From positions 1 to 12,318 of the forward strand of contig NW_021826661.1 in the NCBI RefSeq assembly GCF_006345805.1: a DNA stretch of 12,318 bases. Reading direction: 5' to 3'. Each line of letters starts with the position of its first letter. The stretch's first letter is position 1. Shown piece after piece: positions 1 through 12,318 of the stretch. The position numbers and the translations under genes were made by a program. The stretch comes from Octopus sinensis. Its lineage: Eukaryota. The notes under the pieces were generated by a model. That model was not told the DNA's origin. It saw only the letters and a list, made by a program, of their open reading frames with translations, and searched no databases.

Positions 1-44
1 TTATTATTATTATTATTTATTATTATTATTATATTATTATTAAT
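1..44. repeat. (TTA)n microsatellite
   Basis: ttattattat... from the window start with few interruptions. Confidence 0.95.
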
Positions 45-67
45 CATCATCATCAGGTTGATAGCGG

Positions 68-126
<59 letters not shown>

Positions 127-562
127 AAGTTAAAGGGGATGATGGTGATGCTGATAATGTTGGTGATAGAGGTAATGATGGTGGTGGTGGTGGTTGTGGT
201 GGTGATGGTGATGATGTTGATAACGATGACGACGATGATGATGATGATGATGATGATGACGATGATGATGATAATGATACATCATCGTTATTATCATGAT
301 CGCCATAATGATGATGATCATCATCATCCTCATCATAGCCATCATCATCATTATCGCCAGCATCGCCGTCATTGTCCTCATCGCTGCCACCAGGCCACTA
401 CAGCCATGATGGGTGTAGGTAGGGTGGGGACAGTATCAGTACCAGCTCTTCTACCCTTCAACGTGATGAGGATGATAATGATGATGATGATGATGATGAT
501 GAACATTACCATCGTCATGAACGTCATCGTCGTCGTCATCATCACCGTCATTGTCATCATCA
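45..562. repeat. Compound (GAT)n/(CAT)n trinucleotide region
   Basis: Pure (GAT)n 69-125, degenerate GAT/GGT/GAC to ~280, (CAT)n-rich ~281-380, (GAT)n ~464-501, (CAT/CGT)n ~505-562. It explains the poly-Met/poly-His ORFs. Confidence 0.95.
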
Positions 563-590
563 CGCCAGTTCTTTTATTAATACCAATATT

Positions 591-625
591 CCCCTAACCC
601 CACTCCCATCACTACCCCTCCCCCC
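591..625 (-). other. G-quadruplex-forming motif
   Basis: Five C-runs on + (591-594, 598-601, 605-607, 615-618, 620-625). On the minus strand this is G6-a-G4-tagtgat-G3-agt-G4-tta-G4, fitting G3+N1-7 x4. Confidence 0.6.
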
Positions 626-1360: not shown

Positions 1361-1597
1361 TGAATAAAATGGACTTCCATACAGCTATTGTCTCCCAAAT
1401 TCACTCACAAAGCATTGGTCGAGCCAGGGTTGTAGTAGATAATAATATCCCAAGGTGCCATGCAGTGGGATCGATCCTGAAACCACGTGGTTGTAAAGTG
1501 AGATTCTTAACCATATATCTATTCGTGCTCCTACATAATGTTAAGTTATCTGATCAAGTGGATACTTCTAGTTTCAGTAATTTTTCATTCTTTTATT

Positions 1598-2756: not shown

Positions 2757-3342
2757 ACCTATTTCTTTACTACCCACAAGGGGCTAAAGACAGAGAGGAC
2801 AAACAAGGACAGACAGACGGATTAAGTCGTTTATATCGACCCCAGTGCGTAACTGGTACTTATTTAATCGACCCCGAAAGGATGAAAGGCAAAGTCGACC
2901 TCGGCGGAATTTGAACTCAGAACGTAACGGCAGACGAAATACCTATTTCTTTACTACCTACAAGGGGCTAAACACAGAGGGGACAAACAAGGACAGACAA
3001 ATGGATTAAGTCGATTATATCGACCACACTGTGTAACAGGTAATTATTTATCGATCCCGAAAGGATGAAAGGCAAAGTCGACCTCGGCGGAATTTGAAGT
3101 CAGAACGTAACGGCAGACGAATACCTATTTCTTTACTAAGGGCTAAACACAGAGGGGACAAACAAGGATAGACAAAGGGATTAAGTCGATTACATCGACC
3201 CCAGTGCGTAACTGGTACTTATTTAATCGACCCCGAAAGGATGAAAGGCAAAGTCGACCTCGGCGGAATTTGAACTCAGAACGTAGCGACAGACGAAAAA
3301 CTGCTGAGCATTTCGCCCGGCGTGCTAACGTTTCTGCCAGCT
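2757..3342 (-). mobile_element. Tandem trimer of SINE family B (units start at 2757, 2941, 3123 on +; tRNA-like 5' head only at 3301-3342)
   Basis: Three near-identical units beginning acctatttctttacta (periods 184 and 182 bp). The minus strand has an A-box-like tggcagaaacgttag once and a B-box-like gttcaaattcc in each unit (gacttcaaattcc in unit 2). The core gcctttcatcctttcggggtcgattaaataagtaccag resembles the Meta/Sauria-SINE central domain from memory. Confidence 0.9.
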
Positions 3343-3454
3343 TTTATCAATTCAATAATGAAAAATAAAATTACACCATTTAGAAAAATTACATATTATA
3401 GAAAGATTAATATAAGATAAACATATATTGAATTGATAAAAGGTGTTTTTTTCC

Positions 3455-3801
3455 TAATATATATACATACACACATATATATATATATAATATATTTATA
3501 ATATATATATATATATATATATAGATATTATATATATATATATATATATAAATATAAATAATAAAAATAAATATATAATATATATATACATACATACATA
3601 AATAAATAAAATATAGATATATATATATTATATTTCGTGAAAATTGATTAGTATTTATAAATTGAATTTCCCCTGTAAGTTTGGAATAATATTCCCTCAT
3701 ATATATAATATATATATATTATATATAATATATATATATATATATATAATATATATATATATATTATAAAATATATATAGATATATATATATATATAATA
3801 T

Positions 3802-3861
<60 letters not shown>

Positions 3862-3862
3862 C

Positions 3863-3897
<35 letters not shown>

Positions 3898-3898
3898 A

Positions 3899-3952
<54 letters not shown>

Positions 3953-3958
3953 GTATGT
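3455..3958. repeat. Long interrupted (TA)n tract
   Basis: About 500 bp almost entirely TA repeats, with one ~67-bp non-repetitive insert at 3633-3699. Confidence 0.95.
3633..3699 (-). repeat. Unclassified ~65-bp interspersed repeat stub inside (TA)n (copy 1)
   Basis: The reverse complement gagggaatattattccaaacttacaggggaaattcaatttat aligns with 5388-5450 at ~70% by eye. Confidence 0.6.
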
Positions 3959-3961
3959 AGT

Positions 3962-4280
3962 GAGGGCGCGTGGCTTAGTGGTTAGGGCATTCGGCTCATG
4001 ATCGTAAGGTTGTGAGTTCGATTCCCGGCGACGCGTTGTGTCCTTGAGCAAGACACTTTATTTCACGTTGCTCCAGTCCACTCAGCTGGCAAAAAATGAG
4101 TTGTACTTGTATTTCAAAGGGTCAGCCTTGTTACTCTCTGTGTCACGCTGATTATCCCCGAGAACTACGTTAAGGGTACACGTGTCTGTGGAATGCTTAG
4201 CCATTTGCACGTTAATTTCATGAGCAAGCTGTTCCGTTGATCGTATCAGCTGGGACCCTCGTCGTCGTAACCGGCGGAGT
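3962..4280 (+). mobile_element. tRNA-derived CORE-like SINE (family C), tail type 1
   Basis: A-box tggcttagtgg (3971-3981), B-box gttcgattccc (4016-4026), CORE-like tgtgtccttgagcaagacacttt (from 4037). The head is homologous to 10059-10204 and to 7616-7744 (-). Confidence 0.88.
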
Positions 4281-5760: not shown

Positions 5761-6159
5761 GTATATAAATGCATAAAGTTTATATGATACACTTCATTTC
5801 ATTAAACTCAAATTTGCTTCTCTAACGAAAAGTGAAATAAGAATGAAAAAGTTAATACCGATTCCGTCACAATAGAAGGAATCAATAATTGCGATGATTC
5901 GAAGAATTCTAACCGAACCGACCAACTATGATTCTCCATTATTAATGAATCTTGTCCATAAGTGTGCGGAGGTGAGTAAACCGTTATCTAATCCAGCATG
6001 CTGGAGTTCGTGTACAACACGTCATTGAAGATGGGTAGAATTAAATGTCTTCTTATAAACAGCAAAACTACGGAAGAACCGCAGCTACATTTGCATCTTC
6101 AACTGTGTTAGTTAATTCCACAGAGAAGAAGATATATTAAGGGTTTATTCTTATTATCT

Positions 6160-6265
6160 TTTCGATCTGCCTCTCTGCTCGCTTGCTTCTCTGGTCTCCG
6201 CTCGTCCGTCCGTCCTCCTCTACTCCATGTCCCTCTCTCTCCATCTCCCCTCGCATTTTCTCTAT
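6160..6265. repeat. CT-rich low-complexity polypyrimidine tract
   Basis: ctctctgctcgcttgcttctctgg...tccctctctctccatctcccc. Confidence 0.75.
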
Positions 6266-6279
6266 ATATTTGTACATGT

Positions 6280-6412
6280 CGTTGCTGGGTGGTACGAAGC
6301 TTGCTTCCCATCCACACGGTTCTGGGTTCAGTCCCACTGCGTAGCGCCTTGGGTGTCATCTACTATAGTCTTGGACCGACCAAAACCTTGTGCGTCGATT
6401 TGGTAGACGGAA
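6280..6412 (+). mobile_element. SINE family A 5' head, truncated at the Tc1 fragment
   Basis: gaagcttgcttcccatccacacggttctgggttcagtccc...ttggtagacggaa aligns with ~9518-9639. Homology stops at agacggaa. Confidence 0.85.
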
Positions 6413-6773
6413 GTTCCAAAGCTTAGAACTAGTTGTTAAATCCAGATATATTTGTCATTATTCTTCTCTTTAGTTCTTTCCTCATTTGCTCGACGTTATT
6501 TCAGCCAGGTTTCAGAGCTGACCAATCTTTCAGTACAGTAATACCTTGGTCAGCCAGACTCTGTTGTGTTGCACGCGATCTGTGGCATAGAGCTCCATCA
6601 TACTGAAAAATCTCCCCTTCATCCAAGTCTGGTATCAAATTGTCCTTCAGAAACTGGATGTATTTGACACTTATCAAGTTACCGTAAATTTTAACCAACT
6701 TTCTTGAACCATCACATTTTACATATCTCAAAAGCATCAGACTCCTATCCCCAAACCTGGGTCGTTTCGCTTT
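6413..6773 (-). pseudogene. Tc1/IS630-type DDE transposase fragment (left arm), C-terminal catalytic region
   Basis: Translation ...DGSRKLVKIYGNLISVKYIQFLKDNL..GEIFQYDGALCH...LKDWSALKPG*NNVEQMRKELKRR is a decayed FQQDNAPCH...WPAQSPDLNPIE motif. It has an in-frame stop, a ~21-bp deletion near the centre and no N-terminal half. Confidence 0.9.
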
Positions 6774-6805
6774 CCTAGAGGCCTGGCAAATTCTCACTTA
6801 TGGGT

Positions 6806-7159
6806 AAGCGAAACGACCTAAGTTACACAATGAAAACAGTGAAGTTTGGGAGTAAGAGTCTGATGTTTTGGGGATACATAAAAAGTGATGGTTCAAGAAT
6901 GTTGGTTAAAATTGACGGTAACTTGAACAGTGTCAAATATATCCAGTTGCTGAAAGACAATTTGACACCAGACTTGGACGAAGGTGAGATTTTTCAGTAC
7001 GATGGTGGTCCATGCCACAAATGACGTGCAACACAACAGAGTCTGGCTGATGAAGGTGTTACCGTATTGAAAGATTGGCTGGATCAGAGCCCTGCTTTAT
7101 ATATCATCGAGCAAATGTGGACAGAACTAAAGAGAAGAGTTCGTCAGAAGAAATATATA
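6806..7159 (+). pseudogene. Tc1/IS630-type DDE transposase fragment (right arm)
   Basis: Translation KRNDLSYTMKTVKFGSKSLMFWGYIKSDGSRMLVKIDGNLNSVKYIQLLKDNL..GEIFQYDGGPCHK*RATQQSLADEGVTVLKDWLDQSPALYIIEQMWTELKRR matches Tc1 TVK-GGG-S-M-WG, FQ-D and SPDLN-IE-W motifs. TGA at 7022-7024. Confidence 0.92.
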
Positions 7160-7321
7160 TTCTTTCACTCCACAAACATATTTGCTGTGGAATGATTCTG
7201 ATTAAATATACGCAAGGTTGAAATGAACGATGGGGTCGCGTTCACAAATAATCTTTCGAGTGAACTTTCGTTATTTTTCCCTCTATACCGACGTGTAATG
7301 TTTTCGAGTATACATTGTCTA

Positions 7322-7416
7322 GGAGACTCTTCTTAAAGTAGAAGAAATAGCTAAATTCTTTGGCTGCTATTTCTAAAAGTTCATTGTGTGGTAAAGCAAT
7401 TTTTTTGCTGAACCCT
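7322..7416 (+). mobile_element. Right end of MITE family D
   Basis: ggagactcttcttaaagtagaagaaatagctaaattctttggctgctat matches ~12269-12318. 7359-7416 is the reverse complement of the left TIR at 12167-12224. No matching left TIR is seen upstream. Confidence 0.8.
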
Positions 7417-7426
7417 ATTTTATAAA

Positions 7427-7454
7427 ATAATATATATATATATATATATATATA
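7427..7454. repeat. (TA)n microsatellite
   Basis: Perfect TA run. Confidence 0.95.
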
Positions 7455-7744
7455 GGATTGCATCTAGAAAGTTACCCTCCGAGGTACAAGTCCGGGCAAG
7501 GTTGTTTATGGAAGGCCAGCAGTCGCACATGCATACCAGCTTCCCCTATCCACACCACTGATGTTATCCAAAGGAAAGGCAAAGGCCGATACAGCTTGGC
7601 GCCTTTGACATCGCAACTCATTTCTACAGCTGAGTGAACTGGAGCAACGTGAAATAAAGTGTCTTGCTCAAGAACACAACACGCAGACCGGTCCGGGAAT
7701 CGAACTCACAACCTCACGATCGTAAGCTCGACTCTCTACGACTG
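7455..7744 (-). mobile_element. tRNA-derived CORE-like SINE (family C), tail type 2
   Basis: The reverse complement gttgtgagttcgattcccgg..gttgtgttcttgagcaagacactttatttcacgttgctccagttcactcagctgtagaaatgagt matches ~4009-4101. The tail at 7455-7615 is unrelated to 4102-4280. Confidence 0.88.
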
Positions 7745-9497: not shown

Positions 9498-9656
9498 CAT
9501 GAGCAGCCGTGTCGTAAGAAGCTTGCTCCCCAACCACATGGTTCCGAGTTCAGTCCCTCTGCATAGTACCTTGGGTAAGTGTCTTCTCCAATAGACTTGG
9601 GCTGATCAAAGCCTTGTGAGTAGATTTGTTAGACGGAAACTGAAAGAAGCCCGTCG

Positions 9657-9712
<56 letters not shown>

Positions 9713-9935: not shown

Positions 9936-10018
9936 TATATATACATACATACAGACATATATACATACATATATATATACACACACACATATACATATAT
10001 ATACATACACACACACAC

Positions 10019-10058
<40 letters not shown>
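9936..10058. repeat. (TACA)/(CA)/(TA)n microsatellite
   Basis: Directly visible, lying between two SINEs. Confidence 0.95.
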
Positions 10059-10307
10059 TTGAGGCGCGTGGCTTTGTAGTTAGTGTGTCAGCATCATGAT
10101 CGAAAGATTGTGGTTTCGATTCCTCGACCGGGTGTCGCATTGTGTTCTTGAGCAAAACACTTCATTTCACGTTGCTCCGGTCCACTCAGCTGGCAAAAAT
10201 GAGTAACGCTGCGATGGACTGGTGTCCCGTCCAGCTGGGGAACACATACGCCATAGAAGACGGGAAACCGGGCCCATGAGCCTGATAGGCTTTAAAAAGG
10301 GCGCATT

Positions 10308-12051: not shown

Positions 12052-12160
12052 CATATGTATATATATATATTATATATCTATATATATTACAATACTATAC
12101 GTACATATTCATATTATACATATAATATATATATATAGATATATATATAATATATACTTA
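12052..12160. repeat. Interrupted (TA)n tract
   Basis: Directly visible. Confidence 0.9.
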
Positions 12161-12166
12161 ATAATT

Positions 12167-12318
12167 AGGATTCAGCAAAGATTTGCTTTACCACATACCG
12201 AACTTTAGAAATAGCAGCCAAAAATCCACACAGACAGAGAGGATTGTTTTCAAGTTTTGGTTTTTCTGGGAGTCCCTTTTTAAAGTAGAAGAAATAGCTA
12301 ACGTTTTTTGGCTGCTAT
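12167..12318 (+). mobile_element. MITE family D, running off the window end
   Basis: Left TIR aggattcagc...gaaatagcagccaaaaa at 12167-12224. 12305-12318 tttttggctgctat is the exact reverse complement of 12211-12224 (start of the right TIR). The full right TIR is seen in the copy at 7359-7416. Confidence 0.8.

What the first reader, a model, noticed from the sequence alone, without database searches (positions are those of the whole stretch)
6413..7159. Fold-back palindrome made of two Tc1 transposase fragments truncated at the same point
Seen: the arms (- on the left, + on the right) pair over about 330 bp (~6445-6772 with 6806-7159) around a 33-nt spacer (6773-6805), with a perfect innermost 13 bp (6760-6772/6806-6818). 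A hand alignment of ~296 nt gives ~47 mismatches (~84% identity), about 10 of them synonymous, which is what neutral decay predicts. The left arm also lacks ~21 bp. Both fragments start at the same codon and no TIRs are visible. Inference: two independent insertions would not share a breakpoint, so this is probably an inverted duplication or a palindromic non-autonomous derivative. If transcribed it forms a long dsRNA with A-C mismatches and G-U pairs, a substrate for ADAR (established to be highly active in coleoids) or for Dicer. It could act as a hairpin silencing locus against its transposon family.
Basis: partly seen in the sequence, partly recalled or inferred. Interest (0 to 1): 0.72.

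Follow-up and report, generated by a model that had tools for sequence, protein, structure and literature searches.

The report
Decayed fold-back of Tc1 transposon fragments
Two broken pieces of an old, extinct Tc1-type "jumping gene" lie head to head as a real but worn-out 0.7-kb palindrome; it is a fossil of a DNA copying or repair accident, and nothing here shows that it does anything today.

Summary
The inverted repeat is real. Window 6462-6756 pairs with 6844-7138 (295 nt, 46 mismatches, 84.4%), and a perfect 13-bp inner stem (6760-6772/6806-6818) follows. Both arms are internal fragments of a Tc1-like DD34/35E transposase related to Sleeping Beauty. They lack the first catalytic D, the DNA-binding domain, the C-terminal ~50 codons and the family's long TIRs. 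Substitutions are spread evenly over codon positions, and both arms carry stop codons. The left arm also has a 22-nt frameshifting deletion.

The title claim "truncated at the same point" is not exact. The 33-nt "spacer" is transposase sequence contiguous with the left (minus-strand) copy. That copy therefore runs about 29-33 nt further 5' than the right one, which is the classic layout of a fold-back or template-switch junction.

The arms share no more derived changes than random family copies. The palindrome therefore formed while the family was young, not by late duplication of a relic. None of 11 other family loci is a fold-back, and no intact family member was found.

As RNA the region would fold into a ~310-bp imperfect hairpin (-424 kcal/mol). 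Transcription, small RNAs and editing could not be tested.

Verdict: an ordinary, non-mobile transposon fossil. A silencing role is speculative.

The parts
6462..6772 (-). Left arm. Internal fragment of a Tc1-like transposase (family HMM ~641-966), reverse-oriented. It holds the second catalytic D (FQYDG) and the E region (VEQM), a stop (KPG*, 6501-6503) and a frameshift.
   Evidence: nhmmer minus-strand hit HMM 588-966 = window 6822-6462, E=5.5e-101.
6757..6759 (-). Site of a 22-nt frameshifting deletion in the left arm. The right arm has 25 nt (6819-6843) where the left has 3.
   Evidence: Family copies and the right arm carry the missing segment.
6773..6801 (-). The 'spacer' or loop. It is not foreign DNA. 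It is the 5'-ward continuation of the left copy (reads K*EFARPLG, family KREFVRxPTG), with an in-frame TGA at 6794-6796.
   Evidence: HSP 6462-6801 to L005; 6762-6801 to L004; posteriors 8-*.
6802..6805 (.). Junction zone (GGGT), 4 nt that cannot be assigned to either copy. The inferred ancestral sequences on either side share an imperfect 5/6 microhomology (GAATGC/GAAAGC).
   Evidence: Inference from the family consensus; weak.
6806..7138 (+). Right arm. The same internal transposase segment in forward orientation (GKRND...LKRR), with a premature stop at 7022-7024 (CHK*).
   Evidence: DDE_3, profile 37-138/146; nhmmer plus-strand hit to HMM 980, E=2.7e-117.
7139..7165 (+). Right-copy-only extension. 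It holds 14-27 nt more family sequence (VRQKK) than the left arm retains. Family homology then stops about 370 nt short of the element's 3' end.
   Evidence: alignment to 7152, envelope to 7165; z up to 3.5 for the first 14-27 nt only.
6285..6461 (+). Neighbour, not part of the palindrome. A tRNA-type SINE (6285-~6438) with a degenerate TA-rich tail that abuts, and probably set, the outer end of the left arm.
   Evidence: nhmmer 6285-6418, envelope to 6438, E=1.3e-28.

Best explanation
This is a dead, non-mobile inverted duplication of an internal ~350-390-bp segment of a Tc1-like (DD34/35E, long-TIR, Sleeping-Beauty-like) DNA transposon.

Most likely origin: one fold-back event while the family was still young. 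A DNA end or stalled nascent strand inside the left (minus-strand) copy turned back on itself, or on the complementary strand, about 30 nt from its tip. It then copied the same segment in reverse. This left an unpaired loop that is contiguous with the left copy (the 'spacer') and an inverted right copy that starts about 30 nt further in.

Both arms have since decayed neutrally, each about 8-10% from the family consensus. They acquired stops and a 22-nt deletion, and a SINE landed at the left outer edge.

Shown: the anatomy, the family assignment, neutral decay, that the spacer belongs to the left copy, early formation, and the absence of TIRs.
Inferred: the single-event fold-back mechanism itself.

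Today the only intrinsic property of the locus is that read-through transcription would give a ~310-bp imperfect dsRNA hairpin. No function is indicated.
For: - Geometry: arms 84.4% identical over 295 nt plus a perfect 13-bp inner stem.
- The spacer is contiguous with the left copy. This is the defining layout of fold-back inverted duplications: a single-copy spacer, with short inverted homology at the junction between the spacer and the inverted copy (PMC3907307, read).
- The inner breakpoints differ by only ~33-36 nt in a ~1.5-kb element. The outer limits of family homology differ by only 14-30 nt (HMM 966 against 980-995). My rough estimate for independent breaks is about 5% x 10%.
- Neutral decay: mismatches by codon position 13/18/15, 10 synonymous against 29 non-synonymous codons, stops in both arms.
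- Early origin: against the family consensus, 23 and 30 private changes but only 3 shared ones. The arm pair ranks 26th of 78 pairs for shared derived sites.
- Not mobile: no TIRs in the window, whereas the family has long TIRs. 0 of 11 other loci are fold-backs.
- Not an artefact: 16% divergence and indels between the arms.
Against: - A single locus cannot separate a one-step fold-back from two head-to-head copies followed by a hairpin-guided central deletion. Both predict the same junction.
- Microhomology at the junction is only inferable from a consensus of other copies (5/6, imperfect). Four nt (6802-6805) match neither side well.
- The right arm keeps 14-27 nt of family sequence that the supposed template (the left copy) no longer has. 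A later loss at the left outer end must therefore be assumed; a SINE does sit there.
- The source genome could not be searched, so the copy number of the junction is unknown.
Confidence: 0.55

Rival explanations
1. Two separate copies of the then-active element inserted head to head, for example by local hopping or insertion into a sister copy. The resulting long inverted repeat was then stabilised by one central deletion. Its endpoints were nearly symmetric because hairpin or cruciform pairing brings equivalent positions of the two arms together. The outer ends were trimmed later.
For: - The arms behave as two independent descendants of the consensus: 3 shared derived sites against 23 and 30 private ones, no more than random pairs of copies.
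- The junction is a simple join of family positions ~606 and ~641, with at most 4 unassigned nt.
- A SINE abuts the left outer end, which shows that later events did reshape the edges.
- From general knowledge, not tested here: long inverted repeats are deletion-prone.
Against: - It needs at least three events (two insertions, a central deletion removing ~640 nt from each copy to within ~35 nt, and outer truncations that also coincide to within 14-30 nt) where one fold-back plus trimming suffices.
- No TIR remnant or second-copy remnant exists anywhere else in the 12.3-kb window.
- None of 11 other family loci shows paired copies.
Confidence: 0.25
2. The palindrome is one copy of a mobile or otherwise amplified fold-back unit, either a non-autonomous palindromic derivative or part of a larger composite repeat. 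It arrived here as a unit, which would explain why both outer ends fall at almost the same family position and why the flanks are unrelated.
For: - The outer limits of family homology nearly coincide (HMM 966 against 980-995).
- The flanks beyond the arms are not homologous to each other.
Against: - The outer ends lie inside the transposase coding sequence. There are no TIRs and no TA or other TSD.
- 0 of 11 other family loci carry the junction.
- An exact two-anchor junction pattern found nothing in JGI metagenome contigs. This is a weak test, since host genomes are hardly represented there.
- The left outer end is explained by a SINE tail.
Confidence: 0.07
3. The locus is, or once was, a hairpin-RNA silencer of its own transposon family, like Mu killer. 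Read-through transcription would give a long dsRNA that is diced into siRNAs or piRNA precursors, or hyper-edited by ADAR.
For: - Predicted RNA hairpin of ~310 bp: -423.7 kcal/mol, z = -30.
- When it formed, the arms were near-consensus and therefore near-identical to active copies.
- Precedents exist: Mu killer (PMC3440606, abstract seen), Ac/Ds composite insertions with inverted fractured Ac fragments that make siRNAs (10.1101/2020.01.07.897926), and Drosophila hpRNA loci (PMC10317233).
Against: - There is no evidence of transcription, small RNAs or editing, and none is obtainable here.
- The arms evolved neutrally and independently, with no sign of maintained pairing: 47 of 311 positions are now unpaired or wobble, and the longest perfect run is 26 bp.
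- All family copies found are degenerate fragments of at most 180 aa. The arms are at most 84% identical to them, so nothing is left to silence.
- No Rfam family matched.
Confidence: 0.07

Closest known systems
Fold-back inverted duplications with a single-copy spacer (human constitutional inv-dup, PMC3907307; short fold-back templated insertions at yeast DSBs, PMC11724301)
   Same: Two inverted copies are separated by a short unique stretch that is contiguous with only one copy. The join lies at or near a short inverted (micro)homology. No foreign DNA sits at the junction.
   Different: - Scale. The arms here are ~330 bp with a ~30-nt loop. The human cases have megabase duplications with spacers of 0.7-70 kb. 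The yeast insertions are ~5-34 bp.
- The duplication here ends after ~350 nt on both sides instead of running on along the chromosome, so a second switch or a fragment intermediate is needed.
- Microhomology is only inferable here, not observed.
Maize Mu killer, and Ac/Ds composite insertions made by alternative transposition (PMC3440606; 10.1101/2020.01.07.897926)
   Same: A partial transposase gene of a DNA transposon is duplicated in inverted orientation and can give a long hairpin transcript. It was formed while the family was active.
   Different: - Mu killer includes TIR/promoter-proximal sequence. It is transcribed from a flanking gene and demonstrably makes siRNAs that silence MuDR. 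Here there are no TIRs, no known promoter and no RNA data, and the target family appears extinct.
- The superfamily differs (Tc1/mariner against Mutator or hAT), and the host is an animal, not a plant.
Sleeping Beauty / IR-DR-type Tc1-like transposons
   Same: The family consensus aligns end to end with the SB100X catalytic domain (E=3e-32). It carries DDE_3, the second D and the E motifs, and long TIRs of ~100-230 bp in family loci.
   Different: - The window holds only an internal ~120-codon segment, twice. It lacks the first D, the paired/HTH DNA-binding domain, the C-terminus and the TIRs.
- The closest full-length transposases found are at most 48% identical.
Animal hairpin-RNA (hpRNA) endo-siRNA loci (Drosophila, PMC10317233)
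   Same: A long inverted repeat with a short loop, derived from duplication of the sequence it could target.
   Different: hpRNA loci are defined by expression and Dicer-2/AGO2-dependent siRNAs. Nothing of that kind is known or testable here, and arm complementarity has decayed to 84%.

Membership tests
Tc1/mariner superfamily, Tc1-like (DD34E-type) transposase | Similarity of the catalytic domain to DDE_3 / Tc1-like transposases | tested here: met
   - Right arm: Pfam DDE_3 at 29.6 bits (cut-off 28.6), profile positions 37-138 of 146.
- Family consensus: DDE_3 at 60.5 bits, and SB100X 5cr4 at E=3.3e-32 over the full length.
- The left arm alone gave no Pfam hit, but it is 84% identical to the right arm in DNA.
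Tc1/mariner superfamily, Tc1-like (DD34E-type) transposase | Complete D-D-E catalytic triad in an open reading frame | tested here: not met
   - Both arms start after the first D. The family's 'SDKT' motif lies about 12 codons upstream of the left copy's inner end.
- The second D and the E are present.
- Both arms have stops (7022-7024; 6501-6503; 6794-6796), and the left arm has a 22-nt frameshift.
Tc1/mariner superfamily, Tc1-like (DD34E-type) transposase | Terminal inverted repeats and a TA target-site duplication at the element ends | tested here: not met
   Family loci have long TIRs: a minus-strand hit to HMM 1177-1355 lies just upstream of each copy. The window has no match to HMM beyond 980 or before ~588. 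The outer ends lie in coding sequence.
Mobile fold-back / palindromic non-autonomous element family | Several genomic copies that share the same palindromic architecture and junction | tested here: inconclusive
   - 0 of 11 distinct related loci are fold-backs.
- The junction pattern was absent from JGI metagenome contigs.
- The related loci come from a different lineage than the window, and the source genome itself could not be searched.
Mobile fold-back / palindromic non-autonomous element family | Arms that reach transposase-recognised termini flanked by a TSD | tested here: not met
   The arms end at family HMM ~966 and ~980-995, about 370 nt short of the 3' terminus. No TSD is present. 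The flanks are a SINE tail on the left and unique sequence on the right.
Fold-back (snap-back / template-switch) inverted duplication | A single-copy spacer that is contiguous with one arm only | tested here: met
   Window 6773-~6801 aligns to the family as a continuation of the minus-strand copy: 26 of 33 nt match, with posteriors 8-*. The plus-strand alignment of the same bases is poor, with posteriors 3-5. BLAST HSPs run through it.
Fold-back (snap-back / template-switch) inverted duplication | Short inverted microhomology at the junction between the spacer and the inverted copy | tested here: inconclusive
   Present-day bases give 0 perfect nt at the strict boundary (T/T at 6773/6805), followed by CC/GG. 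The consensus-inferred ancestral sequences share GAA(T/A)GC, 5 of 6. After 16% divergence this cannot be settled.
Hairpin-RNA silencing locus (Mu killer / hpRNA type) | Ability to form a long intramolecular dsRNA | tested here: met
   MFE -423.7 kcal/mol, z = -30. Of 311 paired positions, 264 are Watson-Crick, and the longest perfect run is 26 bp.
Hairpin-RNA silencing locus (Mu killer / hpRNA type) | Transcription across the hairpin and derived small RNAs, or clustered A-to-I editing | not testable with these tools
   No expression, small-RNA or editing data are accessible. The window's ORFs are not in the protein/contig collections.
Hairpin-RNA silencing locus (Mu killer / hpRNA type) | A live target with near-perfect complementarity | tested here: not met
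   - The best family matches to the arms are 75-84% identical.
- All hits at 56% identity or more are fragments of at most 180 aa. Full-length Tc1 proteins are at most 48% identical.
- Caveat: the source genome was not searched.

The most novel reading that the evidence does not exclude
The fold-back arose during activity of this Tc1-like family and acted as a Mu-killer-like hairpin trigger. It may still be transcribed as a long dsRNA that is diced or heavily ADAR-edited. That would make it a natural animal example of a DNA transposon silenced by its own inverted-duplication by-product.
Probability: 0.06. Interest if true: 0.6.

Novelty: new member of a known kind. Interest (0 to 1): 0.2.

Why it matters
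On its own it matters little. Inverted pairs of transposon fragments are routine debris in repeat-rich animal genomes, and this one is old, non-coding and apparently single.

Its modest value is as a clean, datable small-scale fold-back junction. The loop is contiguous with one arm, and the arms were near-consensus when the junction formed. That ties the rearrangement to the period when the transposon was active.

If the source genome's RNA data showed it to be transcribed into small RNAs or hyper-edited dsRNA, it would become a useful animal counterpart of maize Mu killer. There is no evidence for that here.

Tried and rejected
1. Extending the palindrome into the flanks.
- Local alignment of rc(6100-6461) against 7139-7500 scored 12.5, with a shuffle mean of 11.5.
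- Anchored semi-global tests gave p = 0.07-0.11 for the first 27-57 nt and p = 0.0125 for 82 nt.
- A SINE profile hits the left flank (E=1e-28) but nothing in the right flank even at E<=100.
- I rejected the idea that the duplication includes SINE sequence on both sides.

2. Family homology beyond the left arm's outer end. No alignment of rc(6380-6461) to seven family copies beat shuffles.

3. Sister relationship of the arms. The first test hinted at an excess (4 shared derived sites against ~1 expected). With 11 other copies and an empirical null, the arms rank 26th of 78 pairs. I rejected it.

4. Spacer as a continuation of the right copy. This was my first guess from the reading 'KFSLMG'. 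The family alignment rejects it.

5. A shared ~300-400-nt insert in four family copies as a possible intron or subfamily marker. The inserts are unrelated to one another.

6. An exact junction scan of JGI metagenome contigs returned 0 hits.

7. Rfam returned 0 families.

8. The bacterial promoter/terminator scan is irrelevant to a eukaryotic locus and I ignored it.

9. A search for the accession numbers of the related contigs in the literature found 0 papers, so the species of the related loci stays unknown.

10. The window's own ORFs are not in the protein collection. I could not retrieve independent assemblies or transcripts of this locus.

Full report
OBSERVATION

The inverted repeat is real and is not a composition effect. 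The repeat finder reports arms 6462-6756 and 6844-7138 (295 nt, 84% complementary). It is the longest inverted repeat in the window; the others listed run through TA/CA-type microsatellite tracts or are SINE copies. A gapped local alignment gives the same ungapped block.

The block has 46 mismatches in 295 nt (84.4%), 25 transitions and 21 transversions. In the transposase frame they fall 13/18/15 on codon positions 1/2/3. Ten differing codons are synonymous and 29 are not.

Inside the block, 6760-6772 (GGTCGTTTCGCTT) is the exact reverse complement of 6806-6818. Between the 13-bp stem and the 295-nt block, the right arm has 25 nt (6819-6843) and the left arm has 3 nt (6757-6759). The left arm therefore lacks 22 nt. 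Family copies carry that segment, so it is a deletion in the left arm, and it shifts the reading frame.

Folded as RNA, 6430-7175 gives one long hairpin of -423.7 kcal/mol, against -180.7 +/- 8.1 for shuffles (z = -30). The 16% divergence and the indels between the arms exclude a chimeric-read or assembly fold-back, because such artefacts produce near-identical arms (inference).

WHAT THE ARMS ARE

- The right arm hits Pfam DDE_3 at profile positions 37-138 of 146.
- A protein search found only seven fragmentary relatives. A second search with a family consensus found 110. Every hit at 56% identity or more is a fragment of at most 180 aa. The full-length Tc1-type transposases (316-328 aa, HTH_Tnp_Tc3_2 + DDE_3) are at most 48% identical.
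- I fetched twelve loci carrying such fragments, eleven of them distinct, and built a 1357-column DNA profile from seven of them.
- The translated consensus of the C-terminal half aligns end to end with the Sleeping Beauty SB100X catalytic domain (5cr4, E=3.3e-32) and scores 60.5 bits on DDE_3.
- In the family loci, each copy is preceded by a short minus-strand match to the 3' end of the profile (HMM 1177-1355). The family therefore has long terminal inverted repeats of roughly 100-230 bp.

So 'Tc1 transposase fragments' is correct, and this is a long-TIR, SB-like family.

In family coordinates, the window's plus-strand copy covers HMM ~641-980 and the minus-strand copy covers ~606-966. Both arms lack:
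- the DNA-binding domain;
- the first catalytic D (the family motif 'IIFSDKT' lies about 12 codons upstream of the left copy's inner end);
- the last ~50 codons;
- both TIRs.

Both arms keep the second D (FQYDG) and the E region. Nothing else in the 12.3-kb window matches the family.

THE SPACER AND THE BREAKPOINTS

The 33-nt centre (6773-6805) is not a foreign spacer.

- Read on the minus strand it continues the left copy. It translates as K*EFARPLG-KRND, against family KREFVRxPTG-KRND.
- The profile alignment runs through it with posterior probabilities of 8 to * down to about 6801. The plus-strand alignment of the same bases is poor, with posteriors 3-5.
- BLAST gives single HSPs through it: 6462-6801 to L005, and 6762-6801 to L004.
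- The right copy's reliable homology starts at 6803-6806.

The two fragments therefore do not start at the same codon. The left one reaches about 29-33 nt (ten to eleven codons) further 5'. Four bases (6802-6805, GGGT) cannot be assigned to either copy.

From the consensus, the ancestral continuation of the left copy (GAATGC) and the start of the right copy (GAAAGC) agree at 5 of 6 positions. This is compatible with a microhomology-mediated switch but is far from proof.

This layout has three features:
- two inverted copies;
- a short unique stretch contiguous with only one of them;
- a join at or near a short inverted homology.

It is exactly what defines fold-back inverted duplications (PMC3907307: a single-copy spacer and 2-8 bp of inverted microhomology). 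Short fold-back templated insertions at yeast breaks are a related case (PMC11724301, abstract).

OUTER ENDS AND FLANKS

- The left arm's family homology ends at 6462 (HMM 966). Nothing beyond it beats shuffles.
- To its left lies a tRNA-type SINE at 6285-6418, envelope to 6438, E=1.3e-28, with relatives at 9501-9665 and 1372-1519. Its degenerate TA-rich tail runs up to the arm.
- The right arm keeps 14-27 nt more family sequence (to 7152-7165, HMM 980-~995). Unique sequence follows, with no SINE signal even at E<=100.
- The flanks are not convincingly homologous to each other.

Both arms thus stop about 370 nt short of the element's 3' end, within 14-30 nt of the same family position. The left end was at least reshaped by a later SINE insertion.

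AGE AND RELATIONSHIP OF THE ARMS

Against the consensus of the other copies, the arms differ at 23 (right) and 30 (left) of 291 informative columns. They share only 3 derived states. Among all 78 pairs of family sequences, the arm pair ranks 26th for shared derived sites. An earlier seven-copy test had hinted at a small excess.

The arms are the most similar pair (0.848), but only because each is close to the consensus. The two arms therefore separated when the sequence was still essentially the family consensus. The palindrome dates from the period of transposon activity. It is not a late duplication of an already-decayed relic. The Jukes-Cantor distance between the arms is 0.175.

IS IT A MOBILE FOLD-BACK FAMILY?

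- None of the eleven other family loci has two copies or the junction.
- An exact two-anchor junction pattern found nothing in JGI metagenome contigs.
- The arms have no TIRs and no TSD.

There is an important limit. The related loci come from a different lineage than the window. The window's SINEs are absent from the first eight related loci (about 52 kb), and the abundant SINE-like repeat of those loci is absent from the window. The source genome itself could not be searched.

MECHANISM

Best explanation (about 0.55): a single fold-back or template-switch event inside one copy while the family was young, followed by neutral decay and edge erosion.

The near-coincidence of both inner (~33-36 nt apart in ~1.5 kb) and outer (14-30 nt apart) limits argues against unrelated breaks. 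My rough estimate for chance is about 5% times 10%. A fragment that snapped back on itself and was copied to its other end would explain both coincidences. An in-situ double template switch would explain the inner one.

Main rival (about 0.25): two head-to-head insertions, then a hairpin-guided, nearly symmetric central deletion. This predicts the same junction and the same independence of the arms, but it needs more events.

Lesser rivals (about 0.07 each): a mobile palindromic unit, or a functional hairpin-RNA locus.

FUNCTION

The hairpin potential is real. Of 311 paired positions, 264 are Watson-Crick and 25 are transition pairs, split 11/14 or 14/11 into G.U and A.C depending on the transcribed strand. 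The remaining 22 are transversion mismatches, and the longest perfect run is 26 bp.

Precedents for transposon silencing by inverted duplications of transposase fragments exist:
- Mu killer (PMC3440606);
- Ac/Ds composite insertions (10.1101/2020.01.07.897926);
- animal hpRNA loci (PMC10317233).

Here, however, there is no expression evidence and no Rfam match. There is no sign that pairing was preserved, and no intact target exists in the data available. The ADAR, Dicer and silencer reading therefore remains an untested possibility with a low prior.

VERDICT

This is a genuine but ordinary transposon fossil and a new instance of a known kind of structure. The functional speculation is unsupported.

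Noticed in passing
window 6285-6461; also 9501-9665 (+) and 1372-1519 (-): A tRNA-type SINE family ending in a TA-rich tail. The copy at 6285-~6438 abuts the left arm and probably set its outer boundary. No Rfam family reached threshold anywhere in the window.
   Followed up: partly
window 2776-3301 (three ~180-nt units; units 1 and 3 are 93% alike), related to 1172-1309: A short tandem array of a SINE-like unit, with a further dispersed copy upstream.
   Followed up: no
window 3907-4095 and 10005-10199 (77-89%); inverted copy 7627-7738 against 10081-10192: A second dispersed repeat family (SINE-like, following TA microsatellites), present in both orientations. It forms further potential long-range inverted pairs in the window.
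   Followed up: no
window 7299-7454 against 12126-12318: The right-hand neighbourhood of the palindrome carries a repeat that matches the window's end in both orientations: 7299-7370 to 12245-12318 on the plus strand, and 7359-7454 to 12222-12126 on the minus strand.
   Followed up: no
window 1-600 and 3450-3960: Extreme low-complexity tracts: a (GAT/GGT)n-type trinucleotide region with strong strand skew, and a ~500-bp TA microsatellite block at 10.6% GC. TA/CA/TCTA microsatellites recur throughout the window.
   Followed up: no
L001 4562-4953, L010 3744-4131, L011 3756-4050, L008 ~292-597 (family HMM ~701-718; equivalent to window ~6870-6885 and ~6720-6735): Four of eleven family copies carry a 300-400-nt insertion at the same A-rich site (GATACATAAAAAGTG), but the inserts are unrelated to one another. 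This looks like a retroposon insertion hotspot, not an intron or a subfamily marker. The window's arms are uninterrupted there.
   Followed up: yes
loci L001-L012 against the window: The window's SINEs do not occur in the first eight related loci (about 52 kb). The abundant SINE-like repeat of those loci (for example the L001 insert) does not occur in the window. This Tc1-like family is therefore shared by lineages with different SINE complements, either through old common ancestry or horizontal transfer. The species of the related contigs (ENA ERZ21867824; Logan ERR12408771, ERR12374250, SRR11869390) could not be identified.
   Followed up: partly
L009 2358-2930 (-): A mariner-type ORF (Pfam Transposase_1) lies about 0.8 kb from the Tc1-like copy in that locus, so DNA-transposon debris from a second family sits beside it.
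   Followed up: no
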